DNA from: Fonticula alba ATCC 38817
Taxonomy: Eukaryota; Protista; Nucleariida
Strand: one strand, 5' to 3'
Assembly: GCA_000388065.2 (NCBI GenBank)
Contig: KB932207.1
DNA length: 64,000 nt
Position numbers and translations under genes: made by a program. The notes under the pieces were generated by a model. That model was not told the DNA's origin and did not search any database. It saw nothing but the letters and a program-made list of their open reading frames with translations. Positions within the stretch are counted from its first letter, which is position 1. Each line of letters starts with the position of its first letter. Shown here piece by piece: positions 30,203 to 50,311 of the stretch.

Positions 30203-30962
30203 TTACGCCAGAAGCAGGTCCTGGGTGCGCATGTCGTGATCGTTCTTGCCGCGCGACGTGGCCGGCGGCCGGGCCGGCTTGTCCAGGTTCTCATACGAGC
30301 GGAGCGGCCGACCGACGATGGCGGATATGCTGATGCCGCTGAGGACATCGGCCGCGGCGATCGAGGCAGCCGCCGCCGCCGGCGAGATGGCCGCAATGGC
30401 CGAGAGCGATGCCTGAGGGCTCCCGGGGCCGGTGCTGACCGCCGAGGCGGCCGATGTGGCAAGCAGGGCGGCATGGTGCGCGCGCGCGGATTGCGTCTGA
30501 ACCGCCTTGCGGAAGCGCCGGGCGGTGTAGTCAATCGACAGATCCGTCCACAGGAAGGGATCATGCGTGTAGGCGCGGAAAAGGGTGGCCTACGGGTGCC
30601 AGAGGACAGCCGCGGCCGGGGCGGGCAGTGGGAGGGAAGGGCGCCACGATGGGGGAGGAGGCGCGCCAGGAAGGGTCCAAGTCAGCGAGGTTCCCAATAG
30701 CTCGAGCAAGTGTCCGGGTTTGCGCGCGGCAACCGGACAACCATGCAAGCGTACCTGCGCATCTAGCTGGGAAAAGAGGTTGGCGTGCTTCAGACGCAGA
30801 TGCTTCTGCACGAAGGGCGGCGCGGAGAAGAGCTTATTGCAAGCCGTGCACCGGTACCGAGATTCCCGCTCCAGAAGGACCCGGTTGCGCAGTGTGTCAA
30901 TCACGGCCGCAGCGCTACATGTGCATGCGCATGTGCATGCGCATGTGCATGTGTGTGTGAGA

Positions 30963-31002
<40 letters not shown>

Positions 31003-34000
31003 GTAAGTGAGGGGGGGGGGGCGTGCGCGTGCTAACACAGCAAAGGGGCTAGATAGTCGGCAGGGGCCGGCCTAGGAAGGCCGGTGAGAAACACGCACGC
31101 GTCACCGATACCGAAGAGGGCCTCCGGCAGGCTGATTGGTCCACCCGAGGTGTCAGGCATGATGGTCCCCGAGGAGGAAGAGGTCTCGGTAAAGGCGTCG
31201 CTCGGCACCGTCGGGAGCGGGGCATTCCAGCAGTGCAGCAGCGACTGCAGGCGCAGGGCGAAGTTGCGCGCCCGCGTGTCCAGCCAATCCATCCACGGGG
31301 CGGAGTTTTCTACATCACCAGCAGCATCGGTCAGAGGGGGCGGGGGGAGAGGGGGGGGGGGGGGCGGATTTGAGGCAGGAGACGAAAACACACCAGTGAC
31401 CATTTCCCCATCAATGCCCGGGGGGATGACCGCTCGGACGATGCCAACCCCACCACAGCGCTGGGCCAGCGCCGAGAAGGACGAGAAGCGCGTCATCGAG
31501 TAGTAGTCCACGAAGTGCACCCGCCGGAGGTAGCTCACCAGCAGGTCCACGGCTTCCAAGTCCGGCATGGCGGCTGCCAGCTCGAGGTCCATGTCAGTGG
31601 GCGCAGGGGGAGCCGCCGGGCCGGGCGAAGCCACCGACCCTGCCGGCGCCTCGAGGAAGGGAGCCGCCGAGGGCTCCATCAAGGCGTCGGCCGCCGGCGG
31701 GGCAGGGGCCTCGGCCTCCGGCGCCGTGGCCGGCGTGACCCCCGGGGCAGGCCCGGCCGTGGCCGCCGAAGAGGACCCGGCGGAGGCGCCGGCCGAGGAC
31801 GCCGGCGAGGCGGGCTGGTTGCTCAGGCTCAGTGACAGCGGCAGGAGCAGGGTCGGCTGGGGGGCTGTGGCGGCAGCGGCTGCCGCGGCGGCGGCCGCCG
31901 CCGCCGCCGCCCGCGCGGCCGCCCGGTCACTGTGGCTCTGCCCGCCGGACATGTTCAGCACCGATGTCAGATCGGTTGCCGGGCGGAAGTAGACGTCCGA
32001 CTCGCGCTCCGGGAAGTAGGTGCCGGTCGAGAAGATGACCGCTCGCGCGGAGGCCGGCAGAGGGTGATGGCCAACCCCCTCGCCGCTGGACGCCTGAAGG
32101 ATGACCTTGCCAGACTTGTCGGTGATCTTGCGCTCCAGATCCAGCAGGCGGACCAGCTGCGACAGCTGCTCGCGGTCGTGGCGCAGACGCTCCGGCGTCG
32201 AGGAGGCCGACGGGACCAGCTGGGCCTGGAATTTGGCCGATGGCAGGACAGTTGCCTGGAGATAGGCCCCAGACAGCTATGGAGGGGGGGGGGGGCAGGG
32301 GGGAGGGGAGGCGGAAGGCAGCCGGATTGCGGATGGGGGAGAGGGTGGCGAGAGGCGGGCAGAAATGCCGTGTTGGATGTCCAGGAAAAGAAGGACGTCA
32401 GTGGGCGGCTGCGGGGATAGAGTGATCGAGGCCCAACGATGAGAGGAGGGCAGAGAAAGAGAAAGAAAGAGAGAGAAAGAGAGAGAGAAGGAGAGAGAGA
32501 GGCAGAGAGAGGCAGAGAGAGAGAGAGAGAGANNNNNNNNNNNNNNNNNNNNNNNNNNNNNNNNNNNNNNNNNNNNNNNNNNNNNNNNNNNNNNNNNNNN
32601 NNNNNNNNNNNNNNNNNNNNNNNNNNNNNNNNNNNNNNNNNNNNNNNNNNNNNNNNNNNNNNNNNNNNNNNNNNNNNNNNNNNNNNNNNNNNNNNNNNNN
32701 NNNNNNNNNNNNNNNNNNNNNNNNNNNNNNNNNNNNNNNNNNNNNNNNNNNNNNNNNNNNNNNNNNNNNNNNNNNNNNNNNNNNNNNNNNNNNNNNNNNN
32801 NNNNNNNNNNNNNNNNNNNNNNNNNNNNNNNNNNNNNNNNNNNNNNNNNNNNNNNNNNNNNNNNNNNNNNNNNNNNNNNNNNNNNNNNNNNNNNNNNNNN
32901 NNNNNNNNNNNNNNNNNNNNNNNNNNNNNNNNNNNNNNNNNNNNNNNNNNNNNNNNNNNNNNNNNNNNNNNNNNNNNNNNNNNNNNNNNNNNNNNNNNNN
33001 NNNNNNNNNNNNNNNNNNNNNNNNNNNNNNNNNNNNNNNNNNNNNNNNNNNNNNNNNNNNNNNNNNNNGGAGAGAGAGAGAGAGAGAGAAGGAGAGAGAT
33101 GCACCTTCATGGAGCTGATCTTGGCGGCGATCAGTCCGGCCGCAGCGAGGAGCTCCGCCTCCAGGTCCGCCTCAGAGGGCGGGGGCGCCTCGACGTCCAG
33201 CCCATCGGAGCCGGCATCAGCCGGAATCCCCGGTCCAGGGACCTCGGCCGGCGTGTCGACGGCCATGCCGGTGCCATCAGCACTGTCAGTGGCTGCTGCC
33301 GCTGCCGCCGCTGCCGCCGCCGCTGCCACAGCCGCCGCCGCCTGGATCTCCTTGCGGCTGGCACGCGTCGCACTGAAGGACACCCAGGCCGAACGGGCCA
33401 GGTGCCGCTCGGGACGCGGCTCGCCCACCTCGATGGAGCCAATCTTGACCAGCAGCTCCCCGAAGAGGACATCCCCACCATCAAGCAGACCCTGCTCCTG
33501 TTCGGCCTGCGCGCGGCCGCGGGCATCACGGCCTCCGACGCCACTGGCGCCCAGCATTCCTGGACGGGGCGGGGCCGCCCCGAGCAGGCCGATGGCCGCC
33601 GCTGCCGAGGGGGTGGCCTCCATGGTGCAGGCCACCACCGCTGAGGACACCAGCTCCCAGAGGGCCGAGCTACCGGCATCCGGCCGGATCCCATGGATCA
33701 AGACCAGTGCCTCGGCCGTGGGGCCGGCGCCATCCGAACCGCCGGCCGGGCCGCCGAGCGCTCCCCCGGCTCGCATCGTGTCCACCAGCCCGGGAGTCAC
33801 GTCCGTGGGCTGGGGAAAGGCCCCGGACAGGGGGATCAGCTCCTCCCAAGAGCGCGCCCGGTCGGAGATCTCCTTGGCCGTGGGGGTGGCCATGACCGCG
33901 CGTGAGGCGTCCACCAGAGCGTCAGCCGGATTGTAGGCCAGCGGCTGGCTCGGGTCAAAGGCCTTGAAGGCCAGGTGCACCACCTCGGCATCGGCCACAC

Positions 34001-35889
34001 CGCACCGGCGATAGCGCTCCTGGAACCTATGAACGGGAGGGGGGAGGGGGGGGGGGGNNNNNNNNNNNNNNNNNNNNNNNNNNNNNNNNNNNNNNNNNNN
34101 NNNNNNNNNNNNNNNNNNNNNNNNNNNNNNNNNNNNNNNNNNNNNNNNNNNNNNNNNNNNNNNNNNNNNNNNNNNNNNNNNNNNNNNNNNNNNNNNNNNN
34201 NNNNNNNNNNNNNNNNNNNNNNNNNNNNNNNNGGGGGGGGCGGGGAGGCGGGATTAGAAGCCGGCTCAAGACAGGGGACGCAGCACCGCCCGGCGAACAG
34301 GCCACATACCACTCGGTGTTAGACCACTTCTCAAAGAAGTCCAGGGCGCTGCGCTTGAGCACCCGTTGGTAGTAGCGCTGATGCGCCACCGTGGGGTTGG
34401 TGTTCATCGAGTGGGCCTCCTCCTCGATAAAGCGCTCGAGGGTGATGATGCCATCCGAAGTGTACTGCTCGGCTCTGCATGGGCCGAGGGGGGGGGGGGG
34501 GGCGTGATCGAAGGCATGTCAGAGTCGTGGGAGAAGGGGGGGGGGGGGGGGGGGAGCACGGGCGGAGCCACGGGTCGTACTGGCCCTGGGAGGTGGAGGC
34601 GCCGGCCGGCGCTCCAGCAGGCTTGGAGGAAGTGCCGCTTCCAAAGCGAGAGGGGGGAGGGGGGGACCGAGACCGGCTGCGAGGCCGGCTCGGGAGACCG
34701 TCGCCTGGCGAGATGGACCGGCGCCGGCGCTTACTGCTCGGCGATGACAGGGCGAGCGGGTGGGCGGGAAGGGACGGAGTCAGGGGCAGAGCGAAACACA
34801 AGAACCGAAAGTGCCCACAACCTAGCCAGCACGGACCCAGCCTCAATCAGGGTGCGGCCAAACTCATCGGTCTCGGGCATGAAGTGCCGGCCATGCATGC
34901 CACTGCCAGAAGCATGGAAGCCCCCGCTCAGTGAGGAAGCCTCATGGTGGTAAGAGGGACCCTGCTGGTGGGAGGGGAAGCCACCACCGGCATGGGCACC
35001 ATACCCGGCCACTTGGCGGGAGGACGATCCGGAACTGGAGCTGGAGAACCCGCCAGAGGAGGGATCAGGCCGACGGTCGGACCAGCGGCCTGCAAGCGGG
35101 CGAGAGGGTTAGCAGGGAAGAGTAACTCGAGGGGGAAGAAGGAAAAGGAAGAGAGGGGGAGAAAGGGGGGAAAGGGGAAGAGAGGGGGAGAGGGGAAGAG
35201 AGGGGGAGAAAGGGGGGGGAGGGATGGAGAGAGGGAGAGAGAGTGGAGAGGAGACGTAAGAGGGAGGAGAAGGGAGAAAGAAAGAGAGGGGGAGAGGGGA
35301 AGAGAGGGGGAGAGGGGAAGAGAGGGGGNNNNNNNNNNNNNNNNNNNNNNNNNNNNNNNNNNNNNNNNNNNNNNNNNNNNNNNNNNNNNNNNNNNNNNNN
35401 NNNNNNNNNNNNNNNNNNNNNNNNNNNNNNNNNNNNNNNNNNNNNNNNNNNNNNNNNNNNNNNNNNNNNNNNNNNNNNNNNNNNNNNNNNNNNNNNNNNN
35501 NNNNNNNNNNNNNNNNNNNNNNNNNNNNNNNAGGGGGGAAAGGGGAAGAGAGGGGGAGAGGGGAAGAGAGGGGGAGAGGGGAAGAGAGGCGATAGACGAA
35601 AGAAGGAAGGTGGGTCCAGCAAGATGCGCGAAGACCCGTGAAAGGTTGGGAGGAAGGGCCAGAACAAGGGACGGGAGGAGATGGACGTACTAGAGCCAGT
35701 GGAACCGCTGCCACCGCGGCCACTTCCGCCTGTGGAGAAGCGTGAGCGCCCGGAAGACCGATGTCCAGCTGGTGAGATTGACCGAGACCGGGACCGGGCG
35801 CGGAAGTCCGCGCGCGAGCGCGAACCTGCCGAGGGAGACCGGCCGCGCGACGACGAATCACGGTCCGAATCGGAGTTGTACGAGTCCAT
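30203..35889 (-). CDS. SRRT: Serrate/ARS2 (SRRT) RNA effector (multi-exon, interrupted by gaps)
   Basis: RS-rich N-terminus; DFFEKWSNTEW|FQERY (ARS2 'FF..HK.EEWFkekY'); VSYLRRVHFVDYYS ('YLRiVHslDYY'); C2H2 finger YRCTACNKLFSAPPFVQKHLRLKH; C-terminal RPLRSYENLDKP ('Y.DLDAP'); TAA at 30203-30205. An alternative start lies at 35916. Confidence 0.92.
35150..35590. repeat. Purine-rich (AGAGGGGGAGAGGGGAAG)n minisatellite spanning a gap, in the first SRRT intron
   Basis: The same 18-bp unit occurs on both sides of the gap at 35329-35531. Confidence 0.8.
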
Positions 35890-36465: not shown

Positions 36466-37377
36466 CTATCCAAACACCATCCCTTTGGGGCAACAATTCG
36501 GCCACGAAGACCAGACCGGAAGGGGGGCGGAGGGGGAAGTGCAGGGGGAGGGGGAGGGGGGGGCGACATGCAGGCAGGGGGAGGCAGGGGACAAAACGCG
36601 GAGGGGCGTTTCAGTTGGACAGAGAGTGAAGGCCGGCGTATGGTGTCAGTATGATGCATCACAGGTGTGGCAGCATGCGATCTTTTCCCGGGCCCCGGCC
36701 GCGGCGGTGGCCTGACACCTGCGCGTCGCCGGCTCGGGGCCCGAGCGCGAGGCCAAATGAGGGAGATACACGCACAGAAGAAGAAGGCCAGGAACACCAG
36801 AATCAGGAGGCCGATCATGAGGCGAATCTGCCGGATCGAATGGGGGGGGGGGGGGGGGGNNNNNNNNNNNNNNNNNNNNNNNNNNNNNNNNNNNNNNNNN
36901 NNNNNNNNNNNNNNNNNNNNNNNNNNNNNNNNNNNNNNNNNNNNNNNNNNNNNNNNNNNNNNNNNNNNNNNNNNNNNNNNNNNNNNNNNNNNNNNNNNGG
37001 GAAAGGGGACCTGGCAGAGGCCAGGCTTCCCGGCGGCCAGGGCGGGCAGGGGGGCAGGGGCGCACTTTCATCTTTTTCCAACGCATCTCCCTCCGGAGAG
37101 TGCGAGCCCGGTCGTTGAACTGACTTGACGTGTCGGCCAGATGGTCCGTCTGGGCGGCGATCTCCTCGAGCTGCTCGCCACGTCGGACGGCGCCCAAGAT
37201 ATTCCGCCGCATGCTGTCTGTCACCTCGGCCAGGTTGGATTGGATGTTTTCGATGAGCTGGTCCCCGGGGCCCGGGGCCACGGGCGAGAGGACATCCGAG
37301 TCGCTGAAGTCATCCTCCTCGTCTGTCGGGTGGTCGAGGAGATTGCGACTTTCGGCCGAGGTGCCGGGGGCGGACAT
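36466..37377 (-). CDS. R-SNARE of the synaptobrevin/VAMP family, VAMP4-like (3 exons)
   Basis: SNARE motif IENIQSNLAEVTDSMRRNILGAVRRGEQLEEIAAQTDHLADTSSQFNDRARTLRREMRWKKMK (zero-layer R in RGE). The TM helix IRLMIGLLILVFLAFFF|WMVFG* is completed by a 17-nt last exon (36482-36466). The N-terminus has ESRNLLD..DEEDDF. Confidence 0.9.
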
Positions 37378-38130
37378 GGGGATTGGAGCTGGGGCGAGGG
37401 AGGGGCTAGGGCCGGGACCGGGGCAAAGAGAAGTTGGTACGCGGAAGAGAGGCCGAGATGAGGTGGGGGGGGGGGAGGGGGGCAAGAGGAAACAGCAGAG
37501 GAGCAGGTGGTGGCCGACCCTCGGGCTAAGTGCCCCCTGGATCGGCCCTTCTTCAGACCAGGCCCAGGGGGGGGGGGGGGGCTACTCGCGTCCGGGCAGA
37601 TCGGGGTACTGTCCGGCTGTTTGAGATGCGTGCCGCCGCGCGCCTGTCTCTCCCGCGGGGGCCCGAGCCCTTTGGGGCCCATTTCTCAGTTAGTCACAAT
37701 TGGGGAGGAATAATAATAGTGTCTATATTTCGGGCGGCTCATCGGCTGCCGCACTTTTCCACCCAGTCCCCTCGTCTCCCCCTGGAATCGGGGGACCGAT
37801 TTTTGTGGCAGACGTCGCGAACAGGCGGCACACCTAATGCCAACGGACGGCGCCCCTGGCCGGTGGCCAGGCCTCCGCGGTCGAGATGCCGGGTTTTCTC
37901 CCGGCCCCTTTGTCCCCCCCCCCCCCCCTCGACTTGCCTGCCCCCCTGCCCCGGCCCCGCCCGCGCGCCGGCACAAAAAGCGAGGGCGGGCGCCTGGCCG
38001 AGGCCCGCCCCGAGAGGGCACCCAGCCTCGTCCCCTCTCGTCCCTCTCCCCCCCGCTCGCCGCTCCCCCCCCCCTGTCCCCTCGCCGCCCTTCTGCCCCT
38101 CTCCGCGTCTCCCCTTCCCCCTCGCCGCCC

Positions 38131-41100
38131 ATGTCGGTTTCTCCCTCTCCTGCCAGTGCGGCTGCGGCCGGCAAGGGCCCGCTTCCGGCGGGGAGCAAGT
38201 CCATCTCCTTCACCCGCTTTGCCCCATGCCCGGACGATGCGAACATCGGTGCGTGCTTCCACGGCCGCCGAGCCCTTCTCCCCACAGCCTTTGGCCCTCT
38301 CCTCCTGGGCGTCCTTGCCCCGCCCGGCCATCTGCCACGGTTGCGCCTTGGCCATCGAGCAACTTAGCGCCTCTGACCCCCCCCCCCCCCTTCCTCCGGG
38401 GCCGTGCCCTTCCCCTGGTCGACGGTCCCCATGTCGGCCCAGATGTTCTGACGATCTCCGGTGCGTCTTCCCGGGATCGCCCATGCTCTCAGCCCAAAGC
38501 ACGGTCCACTTCGCCAGGACACCTGCGCCACTTGTGCCACTTACACCGGCCCTTTGCCCCTTGCCCTGCCCATCTCCCAAGGCCTCACTCTGGATCAAGA
38601 CCAGGTGGAGGCCGTCGTCGGGCATCTGCGCTCGTCGTCCCCAGACCGCTCGGTCACCATTTCCTTCCACTGTGCGTCGCCCGCCCCGCCAGCCTCCGCC
38701 TGTCTCTCCCCCCGCCCGAGCGGGCTCGTGCTCACCGTGTCCATGTCTTCCCTTGCAGCGTGTCAGATTCGCGGCACCAAGGCCCATGCCTTCTTCACGC
38801 GCTTGGTCGAGGAGATCCGCGAGCATCGCATTCACACCCTCAATATCCACACTCTGGAGCTTGAACGTACGAAACGTCTCCCTGTCCTTTTTTTTTCCCC
38901 CCCGGCAACTCCCTCCCTCCATGTGCCCGGCCATGAAAACACCCTGGTCTAACTTCGTTTTGGCATTTTTCCCCATCCCCCGCTGGCAGGCAATACATTC
39001 GATCCGCTGGGCTTCCGGTTCTTTGCCTCGAATATCAGCCACATTGCCCCGGCCCTGGTCACTCTCTCGCTGCATTGTACGCTGCTCGCTCCAACGCGCG
39101 CATCTGCCCCGCATGCCGGGCCATTCACCTCCCTGCCTGTCGCGGTTGACACCTCCCCCCTCGTCGACCCACCCCAGTCAATCGCTTGACGGACAGCTGC
39201 CTGTCGCAGCTCTCGCGTTATGTGTTCGCCGCTGCGCGTGCCACCGTCCAGCACCTTTTCCTCAGTCGTGCGCGGTCCTCCCTCCCGTTCGCTTGCCCGC
39301 CCACATGCTGGCTTGTCTTGCTTCCTGGTGTTTGCCCTTCTCTGCCCTCCCTTCCCTGATGCTAACTGTCTGCCCGCTTCTCCGTCTCCCCCCTCCCCCC
39401 TTGCCCTCTTGGCCGACCAACGCGAACGTGAACATGTGCATAGAAAATGAGATTGGTGACTATGGTGTGCAAGTGCTGGCAGCCTCGCTGGGTCCGCATC
39501 TTCCCCTGCGCTCCCTCTCGCTGGCTGGTACGGACACACACACAAACACACACACACACACACATACACCCGAGCATGCTTTTTCCGCCCTTCCCTCGGA
39601 TCCCGCGCGCCATTCTGCTCTGCCCCTCAGGCTCTCGCCCTCTGACTTCGTATTACCCAAGGCAATGAGATCACCGACAAGGGCTGTGTGGCCCTGGCGG
39701 CCGCCTGCAGGTCGCTTGGCCAACTCCAGCTCCTGGACTTGAGCAGTGCGTCATCCATGCGATCTTTCCCCGGTTTTCTGGCCTCCCCCTGCTGACCCCC
39801 CGCCGGACTGCTCACCTCTATCGCCGGTGTACGCCCACAGCCAATTCCATCGAGGAGCAGGGCATCGCCGCCTTGGCCATGCTGCTGGATGCCTCGCCCT
39901 CCCTTTCCTGCCTGCGTCTGGCTGGCAACGATTGTCGGAATCGGTCGGCCCTGCAGGGGCTTGTCGACGCGGCGACCAAGCACCGCGCCCGCGTCACCGA
40001 GCTGGACATTTCCAGTACGTCGTCACCGGCCCCCAGCAATCGCCCCTCTTCACGCGCGCGCCTACACACACACACGCACACGCACACGCACACGCACACG
40101 CACACGCACACNNNNNNNNNNNNNNNNNNNNNNNNNNNNNNNNNNNNNNNNNNNNNNNNNNNNNNNNNNNNNNNNNNNNNNNNNNNNNNNNNNNNNNNNN
40201 NNNNNNNNNNNNNNNNNNNNNNNNNNNNNNNNNNNNNNNNNNNNNNNNNNNNNNNNNNNNNNNNNNNNNNNNNNNNNNNNNNNNNNNNNNNNNNNNNNNN
40301 NNNNNNNNNNNNNNNNNNNNNNNNNNNNNNNNNNNNNNNNNNNNNNNNNNNNNNNNNNNNNNNNNNNNNNNNNNNNNNNNNNNNNNNNNNNNNNNNNNNN
40401 NNNNNNNNNNNNNNNNNNNNNNNNNNNNNNNNNNNNNNNNNNNNNNNNNNNNNNNNNNNNNNNNNNNNNNNNNNNNNNNNNNNNNNNNNNNNNNNNNNNN
40501 NNNNNNNNNNNNNNNNNNNNNNNNNNNNNNNNNNNNNNNNNNNNNNNNNNNNNNNNNNNNNNNNNNNNNNNNNNNNNNNNNNNNNNNNNNNNNCGCGCGC
40601 GCGCGCGCACACACACACACACACACAGTCCGCAGTCGGTCAAGCTCTCGCTTCCATCATCGGACTGACCCTTTGTCCTGTACTGCCCTCCTGACTTCTT
40701 GGCACGCGTGCCCCCGTCGTCCACAGACACCGGCCTCGATGGGGAGGTGCAAATCCCCGAAGGCACGGGCAACATCCTTAGCAAGGGCAGCAAGCTCCAG
40801 GCTGCCGAGCCGGGCCCGACGTCCGAGCCGGCGACCCCGGGCCCGGGGCCCATGTTTTCCGAGCTGTCCATCATGCGCGGGGCCGGAGCTCCGGGCCCGG
40901 GGATGTCGGCTGCCGCGGCGGTGGCCACCCCGCCCCTGGGGCCACTTCCCTCTGAGCGGTTCCTTCGCCGGCGGACCAAGAGCCAGGCCGGCGCACGGAG
41001 CATGTCCCGGGAGTTCCTTCGTCGGCTGACTAACGACGGGACATTGGAGCCGCCACCGGGCCCCCCTGCCACGCCGGCCGCCTTGGCCACTGTCACCGGA

Positions 41101-43541
41101 CCGGCTGGCTCGGCTGCCAGCCACCCGGCCGCCGCGCCATCGCCCGTGCTCCCGGGGCTGAAGTCCGCCACCGAGCCGCTGGGCGATCGCATTAGCGTCG
41201 GCATGCCGCTCTTTTCCACGGGGCTCCTGTCGAGCTCGGCTTCGGGGGCCGCTCCCGAGAGCCTGCTGGTCATCGGTGGCGGTGGTGGAGGGAGCTTCTC
41301 CGGTGTGAAGAATGGCATCGTGCGTGTCTCCTCCTCCTCCTCCTCCTCCTCCCTCCTCCCCCGGCGGCCGGCCTGCCGCCGAGTGGCGTTTTCTCTCCCT
41401 CCCTCCCGCCCCCTCCCTTTTGCTTTTGCCTTTCTCCCTCATGGTCGCCCCGGGGCCCCTTTTTTCATTTCTTGCCCGCTTGATTCATTCACTTACCTAT
41501 TCCCTTGTCTGTTGGCCTTCCCTCCCCCCCCCCTCGCCTCCCCTCCTTCGCCCTGCGCTCTTCCCCTGTGCAGATCTCCCTCGACGTGTCGGAGGCCGAG
41601 GCCGTGGCCAATGGCGCGCGGTCCCACGTGAAAGCCGGCTTCCGGACGTCCACCGGCAGCCAGGTGGTCCAGTGCATGGCGGTCAGCGATGAATGCCAGT
41701 TGGTGGCCTGCGGCCTGGATGCCATGCTCCAGCTTTACGCCTACTCGCCAAGCGGGTGCGCAAATCCCTCTCCCCCTCCTCGCCTGCCGCTGATTCCCTG
41801 GCCCGTGCTCACGGTTCCCCTTCTCCCCTGCCTCTCGCCGGGCCTCCTCTGATCTCTTCCCCCCCCCCTCTTGGCGGTACGCGCAGTATGAAGAGCATTG
41901 GCATGGCTCTGGCCAATCAGGAGGTCCACCAGAAGAACACCTCCGGCTATTTGGTGCGCATCGGTCACACGGCCCTCGGGCGGGTGGATGCTTCGCCCTT
42001 CTTCCTGGCCTGGCGGCCGCGCACACGCTGACCCGTGCACCCCCCNNNNNNNNNNNNNNNNNNNNNNNNNNNNNNNNNNNNNNNNNNNNNNNNNNNNNNN
42101 NNNNNNNNNNNNNNNNNNNNCCCCGCGCGGGCGGATCCTGGCCACGGGCGGCACCGACGGCAAGGTGTCCCTCTGGCTGTGCAACAACACCACCTCGCCC
42201 GACTACCAGGGCCACGACCCGGCCCTGCACCTGCTGGTTCGGCTGAGCCTGCCGGAGGCCGACGGGTCGGAGACAGCCGCCCCGCTGGAGATCGACCATC
42301 TGGCCTTTGCCGCGGTGCCGACCGCCTCGGGAGCCGGCCCCAATGATCCGGACTCGCCGCTGGGCCGGACAGCCGAGGAGCTGGTCCTGGTGGCGGTGAC
42401 GCGGCACTTGCAGCTCTTTTGGCATGTGCGGTCCTTCTTCCCGGAGGGCACGGACCCCGAGGCCCGGGCATCTTGCCTGGCCCCCGTGGAGTCGGTGCAA
42501 ATCAGCTCGCTGATCTTCCGCATGGCCATCCCGGCGCTGAAGCCCGGCCAGTCGACCAGCAGCCGGATGTGGATGCGCACGTGCAGCCTCATCCCCGGGC
42601 CCTACCCGGACACGGTGGATGTGCTGACCGCCTTCAACCGGGCCGACCGGAAGTTCAGCGAGCTGACCCTCTCACGGCTGTCCCTGCGCCGGCAGGTGTC
42701 CGCCCGGACCATCTCCGTGGCCGGGCCGTCGCCGGAGATCCGCGGCCTGGACCCGGATGGTCACCCGACCCAGCAGCCGGCCCTGGCACCGGTCCTCCAC
42801 CAGGAGGATGTCGTCATGAGCATGGCCCCGGTCACTTCGTGCGCCATCCGGTCGAAGCTCATCTCGGCGGCCAGTGTGCCGCGCCTGCTGGCGGTCGAGT
42901 CACTGGCGGGTGGCGGCATCCGCCGGGAGTACTACGCCGGGCTGGGCTTGAGCGACGGGTCGGTTAGCCTGGCCCGGCTGGTGGTCGATGCTCCGGCCTG
43001 GCAGGCCTCCTTTGTCGAGCGTGGGTGGGTTGTCGGCCAGGCGTCCATCGAGCTGGTGGCCTCGAAGCTGGGCCTGCACGACCTGCCCATCAGCTCTGTG
43101 GCCATGCGGCCTCGGGTCGTGGGGCTGGGGAAGAGTGCGCCGCCGGGGGCCGCCGGGGCCGCCGAGGCCGCCACCGCCGCCACCGCCGCGTCGCTGACCC
43201 TGGAGCGCTTCGATGTGGCCCTCTTCACGGTGTCCCCGGACTCGACCCTCCGGCTGACCGAGCTGTCGGTCCCCGGGTACCGGGCAGATCGGCGCCGGGC
43301 TGCCCTCCTGCGCGCGGCGCTCTACACTCTGGTGGGGCTGCTGGTGTTGGGGCTGGTGGTGGCACTGGTCCTGTTGGTGGCCGCCGATCCCGAGGGCGTT
43401 GGGGCCCTGGTGGCGGCTGCGCGCTCGGCTCTCGGCTTGTCGGCTGGCACCGACATCGCAGGGCCGGTCTCCCCGGTCCCCACCCCGGCCCTGGCCCAGC
43501 TGCCTGGCTTCGATGCTGGCCATCTCCACGCGGAGCTCTGA
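38131..43541 (+). CDS. SEC12: Sec12/PREB (Sar1 GEF, WD40 + TM), apparently fused to an N-terminal RI-type LRR domain
   Basis: Sec12 part: GMPLF…LLVIGGGGGGSFSGVKNGI (K-loop GGGGxxxxGxxN), LATGGTDGKVSLW, TM LYTLVGLLVLGLVVALVLLVAA, lumenal tail ending HAEL*. The LRR exons (38131-40014) contain NEIGDYGVQVLAASL, NEITDKGCVALA and NSIEEQGIAALA. The phase-1 donor at 40015 matches the phase-1 acceptor at 40726. Sec12 identity is high confidence; the fusion is moderate because the intron contains an N gap. Confidence 0.8.
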
Positions 43542-44090
43542 ATCACACTTCCAGGCCGGGAAGTCGGACCCTCCAATGGGCGAGAAGCAGGCACACACAC
43601 TCAGGCACACACACACGCAGACACACACACAGACACACAAACACACACACACACATACGTGTGCATGTGGGCAATTCGGACCTCAGCCTGGACTTCTGCG
43701 CCCCTCCTGGCGTTTAGATGCACCTCTCCCTGCGTTTGTCACCGCACTGTGCTGTCGCCCGCCCGGCTCGCCCTTCGGAAATGGATAGTAATAGTTTCAC
43801 ACCCCTCCCCGCGTGTACTTGTGTGTGTGTGTGTGTATGTACAACCAGGGGAAACAAGGATGCGGGGAACGCCAATGGGATGGCATGTGCAGAGCAGGTA
43901 ATTAATTCAGGGGCCAGGACCGCGGCGGCCGACCAGGAGGGGGAGGGGAGGGCAGTCTAGGCAGCGGGAGTGGACCCTGGTGTGACAGGAAGGGGAGGAG
44001 GGGGGGGGGGGGGAGTACAGGAAAGCCGATCGCCGGCCGGGGGGCGGACCACCGGGCGGCCGCACACCAGCGCGCCTCCCCGAGCGGCAT

Positions 44091-45786
44091 CTAGTCCTTG
44101 ATCATCTCGCGGCCAACGATGACCTTCATGATCTCGTTGGTGCCCTCAAGGATCTGGTGGACGCGGGTGTCGCGCATGTACTGCTGCACCGGATAGTCCT
44201 TCAGGTAGCCGTAGCCGCCATGGAGCTGGAGAGCCTCATTGCAGATGTCGAAGCACCGGTCGGTGGCAAACTGCTTGGCCATGGCGCAGTAGGCGGTCAC
44301 ATTGATGGAGGGCGCCGAGAGGCTGGCGTCCGCGGCCGCGGCATTCTTCTCATCCAGAAGCTGGGCCGCGCGGTGAACCATCAGCCGCGAGGCGGTCAGC
44401 TGGCCGGCCATCTCGGCCAGCTTGAACTGCGTGTTCTGGAAGGCCGCCACCGGGCCGCCAAACTGCTGGCGCTCCTTGGTGTAGGAGACCGCCGCGTCCA
44501 GGGCCGCCTGGGCGCCACCGAGCGAGCAGCTGGCGATGTTCAGCCGCCCGCCATCAAGGCCGCTCATGGCGATCTTGAAGCCGGTCCCCTCGTCGCTCAG
44601 GCGGTTGGCCACCGGGACCCGGGCATCCTCCAGGGTGACCGTGCGCGTCGGCTGGCAGGACCAGCCAACCTTGGCCTCCAGCCCGCCGAAGGACAGGCCC
44701 TGCTCCATCTCGGTGCGGTCGACCACCACGCAGGAGATGCCCTTGGGGCCGGGCTGCCCGGTACGCGACATGATCACATAGATGTCGCTGAAGCCGGCGC
44801 CACTGATGAACATCTGGGCGCATGTGCAGATGGCCGGTCAGTGGGGGGGGGGGGGGGAAGCAGGAGGAGGGAGGGCCGGACAGCGGGCAGACATGCGAGC
44901 ACATCGGCACGCGGTACGCCTCGGTGCACGGAAGACACACGGGAGTGGGGGGACAGCGCTACCCGAGAGTGGAAAGGCCAGGAGGATGAATGTGAAAGGC
45001 CCTCCGGCAGGGGCGCACCTTGGAGCCGTTCATGATGTAGTGGTCGCCATCCCGCTTGGCCGAGAGCTTCAGATTGCCGGCATCACTGCCATTGCCGGGC
45101 TCGGTCAGGCAGTAGGAGGCGAATTTCTGCGCATGCACATGGGGAATGGGTGAGTTTTCCAGAACGGCCCAAGAGAGCCAGCATCGCGGGGCGCAGGTGC
45201 CAACCGGCAGGGAAGCCAAGAGAGCAGGCCGCCGGACGTGTGGTGCGCACCTTCATAGACACAAGATCCGGCAGGTACTTGGCGCGCTGCTCCTCCGAGC
45301 CGAAGGCATCAATCATCCAGACGCACATGCTGGGAGGCGGGAAGAGATGGGAGGCCGAGGGGACAACGAGGGGGAGCCGGGGCAGGAAGAGGAGGCGGGG
45401 GAGCAGACAAGCAATCCAGAGGGTTAGGATGGGGGGGGGGGGGGGGGGGGGATGGGGGGGGGGGAGGGGGGGGGGGGGGGGGGGGGGGGGAGGAGCAAGA
45501 TGAAATGTGGGTAAGTATGGCGAGCCGATCGTCGAGCATTCCAGGCCCTCCACCACGCCCGGCGGGGGGGGGGGGGGGGGGCGGGGATCGGGGTGATGGC
45601 ACAGCAATGCCGGCAGCCAGCATGGCGCACTTGTGGATCGACAGGTAGGCCGAGGTGGCAACACAGCCAGTGGACAGGGCCTCGAAGATGATTGAGGCAT
45701 CAAGGCGACTAAGATCCGACCCGCCGTACTTGCCGCTGGCGTAGATGCCTGAAGGGGGGCGATGGTCAGCAAGAGGGCTGCATGGC

Positions 45787-45826
<40 letters not shown>

Positions 45827-46313
45827 GGAGAGAGAGGGGGGGGGGATAGAGCAGGCAAAGAGGGCAAGGAGGGCCCTGGCCGCACCGCCGAACCCCATGC
45901 TGGCCAGGGTGCGCAGGGTGTCCACGGGGAACTCCTCCTTCAGATCCCAGCGGGCCATGTTGGGGGCCATCTCGTTGCGGGCGAAGTCCAACGCCAGGTT
46001 CTGGATGGACAGCTGCTCCTCGGTGAGGCCATCGCTCACTGTGTAATGCGGGTGTTGCGTTTGGAAAGCAGGTGGAGGGGGGCCAAGCCCGGCGGATGGG
46101 GTCAGTCTCTCGAGGGCAGGGCCGCGGGGCGGGCCAAAGGCAAAGAGAGGGCCCGGGGATGGGATGCCGGCGCTTGGAAAGCCCAGCGCCCCGGGAGGGG
46201 AGCAGAGACGCACGGGTGCTCAGGGAGCGGGTGGCCACGGCGGGGCGGGCGAGGGCGAGGGCGGCGCGCGCGCCAGTCGTGCGGGCGAGGCCAGAGACAG
46301 AGCGCGAAAGCAT
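44091..46313 (-). CDS. ACAD8: Isobutyryl-CoA dehydrogenase, mitochondrial (6 exons)
   Basis: Presequence [16 protein letters not shown]…, then [108 protein letters not shown]. All splice phases are consistent. Confidence 0.95.
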
Positions 46314-47957: not shown

Positions 47958-50311
47958 CTAGTGCGCCTTCCGCTTCGCTGACGGCCGGGCGCCATCGTCC
48001 ACCTGCTTCGCCTCCTGGACTTGCCCGACGGACGCCGGGTGCAGCAGGAAGAAGAGCGTCACCAGCACGGTGGCGGCGGCCATCACCCAAATGGCGGCGT
48101 AGGAGAAATGCCCCGAAGGGAGGAAGCGCTCGTACTGCGAATAGCGCAGCGGCCGGATGGCCACCACCTCCGGGACATTGATGAAGCTCAAGCCCGGGGA
48201 CATGAGCGACAGGCTGAAGGTGAACACGCCATAGGCATTGGGCAGGGAGAAGGTGGCGGTGAAGTGGCCATCGGTCGTGGGCTCGAGGGCCGCGCGCAAA
48301 AATGGCTCAAGCATCTTGACCTCGACGCTGTGCGCGGGCGCGGAGCGAGTTGCGGGCCAGTGTGGCCAGGAGAGACCGGGGGGGGGGGGGGGGGGTGAGT
48401 CACCGGATCAGGCCAGGGGAGGCGACCAAAAGGGCGGGCGCGGGGGTGACAGGGGGCGGGCGGTGCACGCACAAGGGGGCGATGCCGGTGGCCGGGATCC
48501 ACGTCCGGCCGTCGTCAGCCAGCTGCTGGATCTCCGCTCGGAAGGTGATCCGATCCCAGATGGTGTACTCCGAGGGTCGCGGCCCGGCGGGGCCAGCCGC
48601 AGAGTCGGCCAGGTGATGCGTGGTAGATACGACGCGCAGGAGCCCAGCGCGGTTGACACCCCACCGGAGGACGTTGCGCGCGAAGGCGCGGTTGCCGGCC
48701 TCGAGCGCGTGGTTGGAGATCATGCTGGTGGATCCGGCCAGCAGGGCGCGGGTGTTCTTGCGAGTCTGCATGCCGGCCACCAGATCCAGCGACCGGCCCA
48801 TCACCGGGAGGGTAGCTGGCGCGCGGGACAAAGCCCGTGGCAGAAAAGGGGAGGAAGGGCGGACAAGGGTCAGCCAATGTGCCAGAGGGTGAGGAAGGAG
48901 AGTGCGCCCCGCTCCCTGCCTTAAGACCCGGGGAAGGGTGCGTACGGGGGACATCGTAATTGGTGACATCGGCCACAAAGGTGGTCGGGTTACCCCGAAG
49001 GAAGGACACCACCTGCAAGGAATCCAGGTTGAAGGCGGGCGAGGAGGTCATCGACGTGAAGGCAGTGCCTGGAAGGGGGGGGGGGGGGGGCCGAGGGGAG
49101 TCAGCATTGGAGGCAGCCGCAGGATCATACTTCCGGAAGGTGGAAGCGCATGCACTCGTACCACTGTACAGAGTAGGCCCGGCGCTCCGAGTGCCGAAGA
49201 GCTTGCGATATGTGTCGGACACCTGGTCCACGCGGAAGGAGAAGGGGAAGTCCCCCTCCTCGAGCGGGCGCTCCGGCGTGGCGTAATCGAGGGCACGGAA
49301 GTTCGTGGCCTTGCCGCGGAACTCGAAGCCAATCTGCGTTGTTTGGTGTGCCAGGAGAGGCGGAGGAGTGAGCATCCGGACTGGAGGGGGAGGACGGGGG
49401 GGACGGGGGGGGGNNNNNNNNNNNNNNNNNNNNNNNNNNNNNNNNGGCTGGGGGCAGGGGGCAGGGGGCAGGGAGCAGGGAGCAGGGGGGGGAGATGGAA
49501 GACACGCACCTGGTAGCCGAAGGCATGGAGGAAGCTGGGCTCCTCGGTGGGCCCGAAGAAGGCCAGCACATTGCCGCCGCGCTCCATGAATTTGATCAGG
49601 TTCTTGTGGTTGTAGAAACTCGGCAGCCCGGCGAAGTCCGTGCCCACGAAGATGAGGTTCCCGAAGGCGGGGAGCCCGTCGTGCGACAGGAAGGGAACGC
49701 TCGAGTCGCCGAAGGCCACGGACGTCTGGAGGCCGATGTCTGTGCCGAGGCAGGCCGGGAGGGAGCGCAGGCAAAGCCGGGGCGGGTGAGCAAAGTGCGT
49801 GCGGGGTGCATGCATGACAGCGTTCCGGAGGGGGGGGGAGGCGGGCAGGAGGCCACCCGGTTGGCGTACCCTGCAGCATGGCCAGGAACTGCGAGTGCGT
49901 TTCGGCCAGATCGGCTGTCTGCAGCAGAACCAGCGTACGCGGGTCAGGCAGGGCCCGGACACCGGGGACCGCCAGCCGGGCCATGCTCGGCTCATTGGCC
50001 AGGATGTATTGCTCGGCGGTGAAGCGGTCGGCCGGCAGCGAGGAGCCGATCCAGTCGCCGGACGGGCGCTCGGCCTCCGAGAGGGCGGCATGCAGTGGCC
50101 CGCGGCCCTGCGCCGTGGTTTGGCTCAGGGTGCGCGGGGGAAGCCCATCGCCGGAGATGAGCGGCGCGACCGGGACCCGAGTCAGCATGTCCGCTTGCGC
50201 GGCCACCCGGGCCGTCGGGGCCAGGAGGGCGCCCAGCAGCAGGGCGCAGAGCAGCACAAGCAGCCGGGAAGCGCCCCTCCCGGTGGGGAGGGCGCCCTGG
50301 AGGAAGGCCAT
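47958..50311 (-). CDS. DDOST: Oligosaccharyltransferase 48-kDa subunit (OST48/WBP1), multi-exon
   Basis: Signal peptide; RTLVLL…ETHSQFL; NLIKFMERGGNVL; NHALEAGNRAFARNVLRW; EYTIWDRITF; FSLPNAYGVFTF…GLSFI…VAIRPLRYSQYERFL; C-terminal TM; cytosolic KRKAH* (KxKxx ER retrieval). Confidence 0.93.

What the first reader, a model, noticed from the sequence alone, without database searches (positions are those of the whole stretch)
38131..43541. Apparent fusion of an RI-type LRR domain to the COPII GEF Sec12
Seen in the sequence: the LRR gene has no stop before its phase-1 donor (…VTELDIS A|GTACGT, 40015). The next good acceptor (branch CTGAC at 40691, CAG at 40724-40726) is also phase 1 and yields VTELDIS-N-TGL, which fits the LxxLxLxx[N/T]xL consensus. 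That exon runs without a stop through a ~150-aa Pro/Ala linker into GMPLF…GGGGGGSFSGVKNGI, the Sec12 K-loop. Established: Sec12/PREB normally begins almost directly with this propeller, and RI-like LRRs form the RanGAP fold. Inference: this is a cytosolic LRR-WD40 Sar1 GEF, an architecture I do not recognise, which might add a regulatory or GTPase-binding module to ER exit.
Basis: partly seen in the sequence, partly recalled or inferred. Interest (0 to 1): 0.85.

Follow-up and report, generated by a model that had tools for sequence, protein, structure and literature searches.

The report
LRR domain fused to Sec12 GEF
In the slime mould Fonticula alba, one spliced gene joins a ribonuclease-inhibitor-type leucine-rich-repeat domain to a very divergent Sec12, the protein that starts ER export; a published survey could not find Sec12 in this organism.

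Summary
cDNA contigs from four runs (two samples, one study) show the predicted GT..AG splice 40014->40727. It joins the last LRR exon in frame to the exon carrying the Sec12 K-loop. The first gap (40112-40593) lies inside that intron and does not matter. The second gap hides 16 exon letters, which the cDNA supplies in frame.

The result is one 1043-aa ORF:
- about 9 RI-type LRRs, mostly one per phase-1 exon;
- a linker of about 150 aa rich in Pro, Ala and Gly;
- a Sec12-like region with an exact GGGGxxxxG(phi)xN K-loop;
- a short linker, one C-terminal membrane helix, and a 50-aa lumenal tail ending HAEL.

The window is Fonticula alba. The public model H696_04501 ("hypothetical protein", 1023 aa) already fuses the two parts but lacks 20 aa at the second gap.

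The LRR assignment is solid (RI E=7e-22, LRR_6). The Sec12 assignment rests on the motif, on human PREB being the only PDB hit (E=1.2), on language-model neighbours, and on topology. HMMER finds no homologue at all.

Schlacht & Dacks 2015 reported no Sec12 or Sec16 in F. alba, so this is the likely missing Sec12. I found no other LRR-Sec12 protein. What the LRR does is unknown.

The parts
38033..38130 (+). 5' UTR (minimum extent)
   Evidence: Small cDNA contigs cover 38033-38190 (X3) and 38061-38235 (X1).
38131..38248 (+). Exon 1: start codon and 39 aa of Ser/Ala/Pro-rich N-terminus
   Evidence: Start of public model P0001. Covered by cDNA contigs to 38235. Donor GTGCGT.
38443..38460 (+). Exon 2: 18-nt micro-exon (DVLTIS), phase 1-1
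   Evidence: Present in P0001. AG and GTGCGT signals. Not covered by the cDNA contigs laid.
38582..38671 (+). Exon 3: LRR 1
   Evidence: In P0001. Its last 13 letters are the loose end of the X2 contig before 38759.
38759..38866 (+). Exon 4: LRR 2
   Evidence: cDNA contig pieces; joint 38866->38990 GT..AG.
38990..39076 (+). Exon 5: LRR 3
   Evidence: cDNA joints 38866->38990 and 39076->39178.
39178..39267 (+). Exon 6: LRR 4
   Evidence: cDNA joints 39076->39178 and 39267->39444.
39444..39527 (+). Exon 7: LRR 5 (28 aa, QNEIGDYG...)
   Evidence: cDNA pieces. Pfam LRR_6 hit region.
39662..39745 (+). Exon 8: LRR 6 (28 aa, GNEITDKG...)
   Evidence: cDNA pieces; joint 39745->39841.
39841..40014 (+). 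Exon 9: LRR 7 and 8. It ends ...VTELDIS with no stop codon, phase 1.
   Evidence: cDNA pieces in all four runs; translation.
40015..40726 (+). Intron 9, the fusion intron. Donor GTACGT, CTGAC at 40691, acceptor CAG. It contains assembly gap 40112-40593, flanked by (CA)n/(CG)n repeats.
   Evidence: Joint 40014->40727 GT..AG in X1-X4; zero contig depth inside.
40727..41319 (+). Exon 10: start of a ninth LRR (NTGLDGEV), the Pro/Ala/Gly/Ser-rich linker (about aa 293-440, with two FLRR[R/L]T motifs), the first propeller strand and the K-loop
   Evidence: One uninterrupted cDNA piece of 593 letters; translation.
41278..41313 (+). K-loop motif GGGG-GSFS-G-V-K-N (aa 469-480)
   Evidence: Exact match to GGGGxxxxG(phi)xN. 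It is the only match in 128,000 aa of six-frame translation of the window, and 1 of 20,000 shuffles matches. It aligns to the PREB K-loop.
41574..41755 (+). Exon 11: propeller blades 1-2 (...QLVACGLDAMLQLYAY)
   Evidence: cDNA piece 41574-41754. Aligned to PREB 5tf2.
41887..41953 (+). Exon 12
   Evidence: cDNA joints 41754->41886 and 41953->42121.
42046..42120 (.). Assembly gap 2. It hides the end of intron 12 and the first 16 nt of exon 13.
   Evidence: The cDNA contigs carry 16 letters between 41953 and 42121 (table 5c). The frame is kept.
42121..43541 (+). Exon 13 (visible part): the rest of the propeller-like region with low-complexity inserts, the membrane helix, the lumenal tail and the stop
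   Evidence: One cDNA piece 42121-43590; translation.
43299..43388 (+). Single hydrophobic membrane helix (aa 964-993), preceded by RADRRR
   Evidence: Kyte-Doolittle scan: the only stretch above 1.6 in the protein. Coordinates.
43527..43541 (+). C-terminal HAEL and the stop codon
   Evidence: HDEL ends Sed4 and P. pastoris Sec12 (PMC10184828).
43542..43590 (+). 3' UTR (minimum extent; the contigs run on about 155-220 letters beyond, past a CA repeat)
   Evidence: cDNA piece to 43590 at record position 156/223.

Best explanation
Window 38131-43541 is one Fonticula alba gene, H696_04501, with 13 exons. Its mRNA encodes a 1043-aa membrane protein anchored by a single helix near its C-terminus.

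Order of parts, N to C:
- a short N-terminus;
- eight and a half RI-type leucine-rich repeats (aa 40-292);
- a disordered Pro/Ala/Gly/Ser linker (about 293-440);
- a very divergent, insert-laden Sec12/PREB-type propeller with an intact potassium-binding K-loop (aa 469-480);
- a roughly 10-aa juxtamembrane stretch and one membrane helix (964-993);
- a 50-aa lumenal tail ending HAEL.

Shown: the splice that fuses the two halves, the single open frame, the LRR family, the K-loop motif and the hydrophobic helix.

Inferred:
- The protein sits in the ER membrane with both the LRR and the propeller in the cytosol.
- The propeller is this organism's Sar1 guanine-nucleotide exchange factor, working as in yeast: the K-loop pushes into the Sar1 nucleotide pocket.
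- The LRR horseshoe, on a flexible tether, is a protein-binding module. It either concentrates or regulates the GEF at ER exit sites, or holds a partner such as Sar1, the coat or cargo next to it.

This is probably the Sec12 that a published COPII survey could not find in F. alba.
For: Fusion:
- The joint 40014->40727 (GT..AG) appears in one cDNA contig per run in X1-X4, with long perfect flanks and no contig depth in the intron.
- The LRR exon has no stop before its donor. Exon 10 begins NTGLDGEV, the start of a further repeat.
- The whole CDS has one stop.
- The public model P0001 has the same fusion.

LRR:
- Pfam LRR_6 at 3e-8, 33.6 bits against a cut-off of 23.4.
- Ribonuclease inhibitor 7e-22, NLRP14 1e-12, RanGAP1 1.5e-9.
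- The AF2 model has 9 beta/alpha units, pLDDT 73-94 over residues 141-300, with Foldseek probability 1.0 to NLRP3, RI, NOD2 and rna1p.

Sec12:
- Exact K-loop motif, unique in the window and expected 3e-5 times per protein by composition. PMC8703528 calls the motif highly diagnostic of Sec12.
- Human PREB is the only PDB sequence hit among 177,635 sequences, aligned over the K-loop and the next blade.
- About the first 47 language-model neighbours are SEC12/PREB/SEC12-like clusters at 0.90-0.94, then a drop to 0.78 for other WD40 families. The pattern is the same for residues 500-1023, which lack the K-loop.
- One C-terminal helix with basic residues on its N-terminal side, a short linker from the last blade, and an HDEL-like end as in Sed4 and PpSec12.

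Context: Schlacht & Dacks 2015 list F. alba Sar1, Sec13, Sec23, Sec24 (three) and Sec31 but no Sec12 or Sec16, and attribute the absence to divergence.
Against: - No statistically significant sequence homology to any Sec12. PREB scores E=1.2. Pfam finds no WD40 or other family in the C-terminal 580 aa.
- An exhaustive phmmer of the last 470 aa against 1.84 billion representatives found only the protein itself and one short 30-residue match to an unrelated 3960-aa protein. The PDB gave nothing for that part.
- The propeller fold could not be modelled (pLDDT 36.5).
- All cDNA evidence comes from one 2012 study, whose kind is guessed as 'RNA?'. It is probably the same data that produced the public model, so the two are not independent.
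- Contigs cannot exclude minor LRR-only or Sec12-only isoforms.
- The architecture is seen in one species only.
- Nothing tested here bears on what the LRR binds.
Confidence: 0.75

Rival explanations
1. The C-terminal half is not a Sec12 homologue. It is a lineage-specific, low-complexity, membrane-anchored protein that carries a GGGGxxxxG(phi)xN string by chance, so the gene is an LRR membrane protein unrelated to COPII.
For: No significant HMMER or Pfam hit for aa 430-1023. The AF2 model failed. The genome is G/A/P-rich, so glycine runs are common.
Against: The motif is unique in 128,000 aa of six-frame translation, and 1 of 20,000 shuffles matches. The only PDB hit is PREB and it aligns beyond the motif. 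Sec12/PREB clusters are the nearest neighbours even without the K-loop, and other WD40 families fall to 0.77. The topology and the HDEL-like end fit Sec12.
Confidence: 0.1
2. The fused mRNA is a minor conjoined (read-through) transcript of two neighbouring genes. The main products would be a stand-alone LRR protein ending in or after the gap and a conventional Sec12 translated from its own promoter and ATG 40852.
For: Intron 9 is by far the longest intron of the gene (712 nominal, against 87-254 for the others). It holds unread sequence that could hide a terminal exon, a poly(A) site or a promoter. Contigs drop rare variants and show presence, not absence (tool note).
Against: All four runs give one contig with the joint at full depth (13-16), and no contig ends or starts in the readable parts of the intron. 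The LRR ORF has no stop before the donor. The 125 coding nt of exon 10 upstream of ATG 40852 are in frame and begin a further LRR. The public model is fused.
Confidence: 0.07
3. It is a Sed4-like paralogue: a Sec12-family protein that binds Sar1 or Sec16 but is not the GEF. The real Sec12 would lie elsewhere in the genome.
For: Sed4 keeps a predicted K-loop yet lacks GEF activity (PMC4419792). Sed4 and this protein both have HDEL-type ends. I could not search the rest of the genome.
Against: Sed4 is restricted to a subset of Saccharomycotina, and no Sec12 was found in F. alba by BLAST/HMM survey. The K-loop Asn and hydrophobic residue are intact. Notes on this genome hold no other Sec12.
Confidence: 0.08

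Closest known systems
Sec12 / PREB (S. cerevisiae Sec12p; human PREB, PDB 5tf2), the ER-anchored Sar1 GEF
   Same: [quoted passage not shown] The cytosolic domain joins a single C-terminal membrane helix through a short linker, and the tail is lumenal. The nearest language-model neighbours are Sec12/PREB clusters.
   Different: The K-loop is at residue 469 instead of about 30-50, because about 440 aa (LRR plus linker) precede the propeller. The propeller region is about 500 aa, against about 345 in yeast, owing to low-complexity inserts. No significant HMMER similarity. No WD40 Pfam hit.
Sed4 and Pichia pastoris Sec12 (Sec12-family members with C-terminal HDEL)
   Same: A Sec12-type cytosolic domain with a C-terminal H-x-E-L type ending on the lumenal side (PMC10184828; HAEL here).
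   Different: Their lumenal domains are long and O-mannosylated, while this tail is 50 aa. The ending is HAEL rather than HDEL, and whether the retrieval receptor recognises it is untested. They have no N-terminal LRR.
Ribonuclease-inhibitor / NLR-type (RNI-like) LRR domains, including the RanGAP1/rna1p LRR
   Same: 28-30-aa alpha/beta repeats (xNxIgdxGaxaLaxaL...LxxLxLs). LRR_6 above its cut-off, RI at E=7e-22, and a horseshoe model matching NLRP3, RI, NOD2 and rna1p. Most repeats occupy one phase-1 exon each. From my own memory, that exon pattern is also typical of RI and NLR genes.
   Different: Only about 8.5 repeats. No NACHT domain, F-box or acidic tail. It is tethered to a membrane-anchored GEF. 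The similarity to RanGAP is generic to the fold, and no GAP feature was tested.
Other LRR + beta-propeller proteins (LRWD1/ORCA; plant DHU1_N+WD40 proteins; LRRK2)
   Same: An N-terminal LRR followed by a WD-type propeller. These are the nearest whole-protein language-model neighbours.
   Different: Scores are 0.80 or lower, a level the tool says shuffled proteins reach a third of the time. They are soluble, their LRRs are of other types (LRWD1) and their propellers are unrelated. None has a K-loop or a membrane anchor.

Membership tests
Sec12/PREB family (Sar1 GEF) | [quoted passage not shown] | tested here: met
   GGGG-GSFS-G-V-K-N at aa 469-480 (window 41278-41313). Unique in the window's six-frame translation; 1 of 20,000 shuffles matches. 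Motif definition from PMC8703528.
Sec12/PREB family (Sar1 GEF) | Significant sequence homology to characterised Sec12/PREB | tested here: inconclusive
   The only PDB hit is human PREB 5tf2, E=1.2, 77 query residues over the K-loop and the next blade. Nothing in Pfam, the exhaustive phmmer or the word-index searches. The literature notes that yeast and human Sec12 themselves need PSI-BLAST iterations to connect.
Sec12/PREB family (Sar1 GEF) | Seven-bladed beta-propeller cytosolic domain | tested here: inconclusive
   The single-sequence AF2 model is unusable (pLDDT 36.5). Indirect support: about seven WD-like 'D-x-x-phi-x-phi' strand groups read by eye, and nearest language-model clusters that are WD40 Sec12/PREB families.
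Sec12/PREB family (Sar1 GEF) | Single membrane helix close to the C-terminus, with the catalytic domain on the cytosolic side | tested here: met
   One hydrophobic stretch, aa 964-993, preceded by RADRRR and followed by a 50-aa tail. The orientation is inferred from the positive-inside rule.
Sec12/PREB family (Sar1 GEF) | K+-dependent nucleotide exchange on Sar1; ER localisation | not testable with these tools
   Needs biochemistry and imaging. The HAEL ending is only suggestive.
RNI-like (ribonuclease-inhibitor type) LRR | Repeats of 28-29 aa matching the RI-type LRR profile | tested here: met
   Pfam LRR_6 at 33.6 bits against a cut-off of 23.4. Porcine, mouse and human RI at E=7e-22 to 5e-20. 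Repeat register shown.
RNI-like (ribonuclease-inhibitor type) LRR | Alpha/beta horseshoe fold | tested here: met
   The AF2 model has 9 strand/helix units, pTM 0.65 and pLDDT 73-94 over residues 141-300. Foldseek gives probability 1.0 to NLRP3, RI, NOD2, DRC5 and rna1p. The N-terminal repeats are modelled with lower confidence (52-64).
RanGAP | GAP-competent surface for a small GTPase, and the Ran-specific context (acidic region, SUMO/WPP targeting) | not tested
   Only generic LRR similarity (RanGAP1 1.5e-9, rna1p 6e-6, both weaker than RI and NLRs). I do not file it as a RanGAP.

The most novel reading that the evidence does not exclude
In a lineage where neither Sec16 nor a TANGO1/cTAGE5-type organiser has been found, the tethered LRR horseshoe is a built-in organiser or switch for COPII initiation. 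It would either cluster the GEF at ER exit sites by binding coat or cargo-receptor proteins, or dock on Sar1 or on its own propeller to gate exchange. The two FLRR[R/L]T sites in the linker could act as a phospho-switch. [quoted passage not shown]
Probability: 0.2. Interest if true: 0.75.

Novelty: new variant of a known kind. Interest (0 to 1): 0.55.

Why it matters
Sec12 starts COPII budding. It is notoriously hard to recognise by sequence, and its apparent absence from many eukaryotes has been an open point (Schlacht & Dacks 2015 name F. alba as lacking both Sec12 and Sec16).

This gene is a concrete, testable candidate for the missing GEF in Fonticula alba, which that survey lists with the Fungi (it is usually placed as a close relative of fungi). 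It shows that motif plus topology can recover Sec12 where HMM searches fail.

Every Sec12 described in the papers I read has its K-loop close to the N-terminus. A 440-aa cytosolic LRR and linker in front of it is, as far as my searches reach, undescribed. It offers a natural experiment on how the GEF can be localised or regulated.

The caveat is that it is a single gene in a single sequenced species, with no functional data.

Tried and rejected
- Pfam on single exons: nothing; the pieces are too short or too divergent.
- Exhaustive phmmer of the last 470 aa against 1.84 billion representatives: only the protein itself, plus a short 30-residue match to a 3960-aa protein that I did not follow up.
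- Word-index searches of aa 430-1023, of aa 444-569 alone at E<=10, and of the LRR part: self only, plus two generic RI-like LRR proteins (P0003, P0004). So no orthologue and no donor of the LRR could be named.
- PDB search with the last exon: nothing.
- AF2 of aa 440-970 without an alignment: pLDDT 36.5, so I ran no fold search on it. I had no tool-derived Sec12 sequences to build an alignment, and I did not type any from memory.
- Two 2026 RNA-seq runs listed under 'same species label' (X12, X13): zero reads from about 1.8 billion letters each. No test; they probably do not contain this organism.
- Atlas search with the whole protein: only generic LRR+WD families at 0.80 or lower, so there is no LRR-Sec12 cluster of 50 or more members.
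- Literature: no paper joins Sec12 to an LRR domain. The co-occurrences do not describe an LRR domain in Sec12. No paper mentions H696_04501. PMC3527946 is not held.
- RanGAP-like GAP function for the LRR: considered and not adopted. The similarity is weaker than to RI and NLRs, and no catalytic feature was testable.

Full report
**What the sequence shows**

The window is GC-rich eukaryotic DNA with short GT[AG]CG...AG introns. From ATG 38131 a series of small exons encodes 28-30-aa leucine-rich repeats. From exon 2 to exon 9 every exon starts and ends in phase 1. Exons 3-8 hold one repeat each and exon 9 holds two. Exon 9 ends ...VTELDIS plus one base at 40014, without a stop, followed by GTACGT. 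After assembly gap 40112-40593 come a CTGAC at 40691 and a CAG acceptor at 40724-40726. The exon from 40727 reads N-TGLDGEV..., then a Pro/Ala/Gly/Ser-rich stretch, then ...LLVIGGGGGGSFSGVKNGI up to the donor at 41320. The only correction is that the first in-frame ATG of that exon is at 40852.

**The gaps and the splice, tested first**

Four small 2012 runs hold the stretch as Logan contigs. They come from two samples of one study, and their kind is guessed as "RNA?". In each run a single contig of about 3.1 kb lies on the window as a chain of pieces. The pieces are separated by GT..AG joints and have no mismatches:
- 38866->38990
- 39076->39178
- 39267->39444
- 39519/39527->39661 (blurred by a masked repeat)
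- 39745->39841
- 40014->40727
- 41319->41574
- 41754->41886
- 41953->42121

It has 174 and 593 perfectly matching letters on its two sides, and contig depth inside the intron is zero. A precise, in-frame GT..AG deletion is a splice, not the kind of chimera that assemblers make between neighbouring genes.

Gap 1 is therefore intronic and irrelevant to the frame. At gap 2 the contigs carry 16 letters between 41953 and 42121 (table 5c). With them the sequence reads ...GYL-KSMAFS-PRGRILATGGTDGKVSLW..., a textbook WD-type strand set.

Joined this way the CDS is 3132 nt (1043 codons plus the stop), with one stop at 43539-43541.

Limits of this evidence:
- The joints among exons 1, 2 and 3 were not seen. 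There are only small contigs over 38033-38235 and a 13-letter loose end matching the end of exon 3.
- All cDNA comes from one study.
- Contigs cannot exclude rare isoforms.
- Two 2026 runs offered under the same species label gave no reads and test nothing.

**Identity of the locus**

The exhaustive protein search returned a 1023-aa protein identical to the last exon. The word-index search names it hypothetical protein H696_04501 of Fonticula alba, on scaffold KB932207.1 of GCA_000388065.2.

The public model already contains the fusion. It differs from the cDNA-based protein only by lacking the 20 aa KSMAFSPRGRILATGGTDGK, because it splices around gap 2. So the fused model is not new. What is new is reading it as LRR plus Sec12.

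**The N-terminal half**

- Pfam LRR_6 is above its gathering score.
- PDB sequence hits are led by ribonuclease inhibitors (7e-22), then LRRC34, NLRP14, RSP15, DRC5 and RanGAP1 at 1.5e-9.
- A single-sequence AF2 model gives nine strand/helix units, with pLDDT 73-94 over residues 141-300.
- Foldseek matches NLRP3, RI, NOD2 and rna1p at probability 1.0.

This is an RI-type (RNI-like) LRR horseshoe of about 8.5 repeats. The similarity to RanGAP is generic to the fold.

**The C-terminal half**

Sequence methods are almost blind here:
- No Pfam family.
- No homologue in 1.84 billion representatives for the last 470 aa.
- Nothing by word index, even at E<=10 for the K-loop region.
- Nothing in the PDB for the last exon.
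- The AF2 model failed.

Four lines nevertheless point to Sec12:
1. The motif GGGGxxxxG(phi)xN, which PMC8703528 calls highly diagnostic of Sec12 homologues, is matched exactly at aa 469-480. It occurs nowhere else in 128,000 aa of six-frame translation of this G-rich window, and in 1 of 20,000 shuffles. Joiner & Fromme (bioRxiv 10.1101/2020.10.08.331793) show that this loop disrupts the Sar1 nucleotide site. They single out the hydrophobic residue (Ile38 in yeast; Val478 here).
2. The only PDB sequence that phmmer reports for aa 430-1023 is human PREB. The alignment covers the K-loop and the next blade (lvacgldamlqlyay against ILAAGQDAHCQLLRF), E=1.2. About one chance hit is expected at that score, but only a handful of the 177,635 PDB sequences are Sec12 or PREB, so a chance hit would rarely be one of them. 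This is my estimate, not a computed value.
3. In the ESM Atlas, roughly the first 47 neighbours are clusters named SEC12, PREB or SEC12-like, or unnamed fungal, diatom and green-algal WD40 clusters of Sec12 size. They score 0.90-0.94, after which scores fall to 0.78. The same holds for residues 500-1023, which lack the K-loop.
4. Topology. There is one hydrophobic helix (aa 964-993), about 10 residues after the last WD-like strand and preceded by RADRRR. A 50-aa tail ending HAEL follows. Sed4 and P. pastoris Sec12 end in HDEL (PMC10184828).

I put Sec12-family membership at about 0.85.

**Context in the literature**

Schlacht & Dacks 2015 (PMC4419792) surveyed COPII in 74 genomes. Their table lists F. 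alba Sar1, Sec13, Sec23, three Sec24 and Sec31, but no Sec12 and no Sec16. [quoted passage not shown]

No paper in the library mentions H696_04501. None links Fonticula to a Sec12 or describes an LRR on Sec12. No Atlas cluster of 50 or more members combines LRR with a Sec12-like propeller.

**How it most likely works**

- Shown: one mRNA and one ORF, with the LRR, linker, K-loop region, membrane helix and tail in that order.
- Inferred from the family: the helix anchors the protein in the ER with the N-terminal 960 aa in the cytosol, and the propeller's K-loop catalyses GDP release from Sar1 (H696_05008).
- Inferred, weakly: the LRR sits on a flexible tether of about 150 aa and binds a protein. 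It could localise or cluster the GEF, recruit substrate or coat, or fold back to gate the GEF.

The linker carries two near-repeats, RFLRRRTKS and EFLRRLTND. They look like basic-kinase sites, but this is only a lead.

**Rivals**

The rivals are a chance motif on a non-Sec12 protein (0.10), a minor conjoined transcript (0.07), and a Sed4-like non-GEF paralogue with the real Sec12 elsewhere (0.08). Their evidence is set out in the Rival explanations section.

**Verdict**

This is a new variant of a known kind: a Sec12 with an N-terminal RI-type LRR, and the likely missing Sec12 of F. alba. It is known from a single species, and the role of the LRR is untested. Interest is moderate (0.55).

Noticed in passing
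window 42046-42120 and P0001 residues 565/566: The public protein model H696_04501 splices around the assembly gap and lacks 20 aa (KSMAFSPRGRILATGGTDGK) of a WD-type blade. cDNA contigs supply the 16 hidden exon letters and restore it.
   Followed up: yes
window 36466-37377 (-), from L001 8336-9247: A 126-aa synaptobrevin-family (PF00957) R-SNARE gene lies head-to-head with the LRR-Sec12 gene, about 750 bp upstream. That makes two membrane-traffic genes on a possibly shared divergent promoter. It contains gap 36860-36998.
   Followed up: no
window 40960-40971 and 41014-41025: There are two near-repeat motifs in the disordered linker, RFLRRRTKS and EFLRRLTND (FLRR[R/L]T). They could be basic-kinase or 14-3-3-type sites, or a short amphipathic element.
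   Followed up: no
window 43168-43301: In X1 and X2 a second contig overlaps the GCC/Ala-rich stretch. It has a back-joint 43301->43168 with 17 other letters and loose ends at 43190 and 43281. It is probably another transcript sharing low-complexity sequence or an assembly artefact. Unexplained.
   Followed up: no
window 40050-40111, 40594-40628, 39530-39565, 43595-43660: (CA)n/(CG)n microsatellites sit in introns and the 3' UTR and flank gap 1 on both sides. They are the likely reason the assembly broke there.
   Followed up: partly
window 43527-43538: The C-terminus is HAEL, one residue off HDEL. Sed4 and P. pastoris Sec12 end in HDEL, where it is dispensable for ER or ERES localisation (PMC10184828).
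   Followed up: partly
window 44091-46313 (-), 47958-50311 (-), 51318 onward (-), 30203-35889 (-): Neighbouring called genes are an acyl-CoA dehydrogenase, OST48 (an oligosaccharyltransferase subunit), an XRN 5'-3' exoribonuclease, and a 1110-aa protein without any Pfam family.
   Followed up: no
runs X5-X24 ('organism B'): The runs of 2026 offered under the same species label carry a different coded organism name. The two I tried gave zero reads on this gene. They probably do not contain Fonticula.
   Followed up: partly
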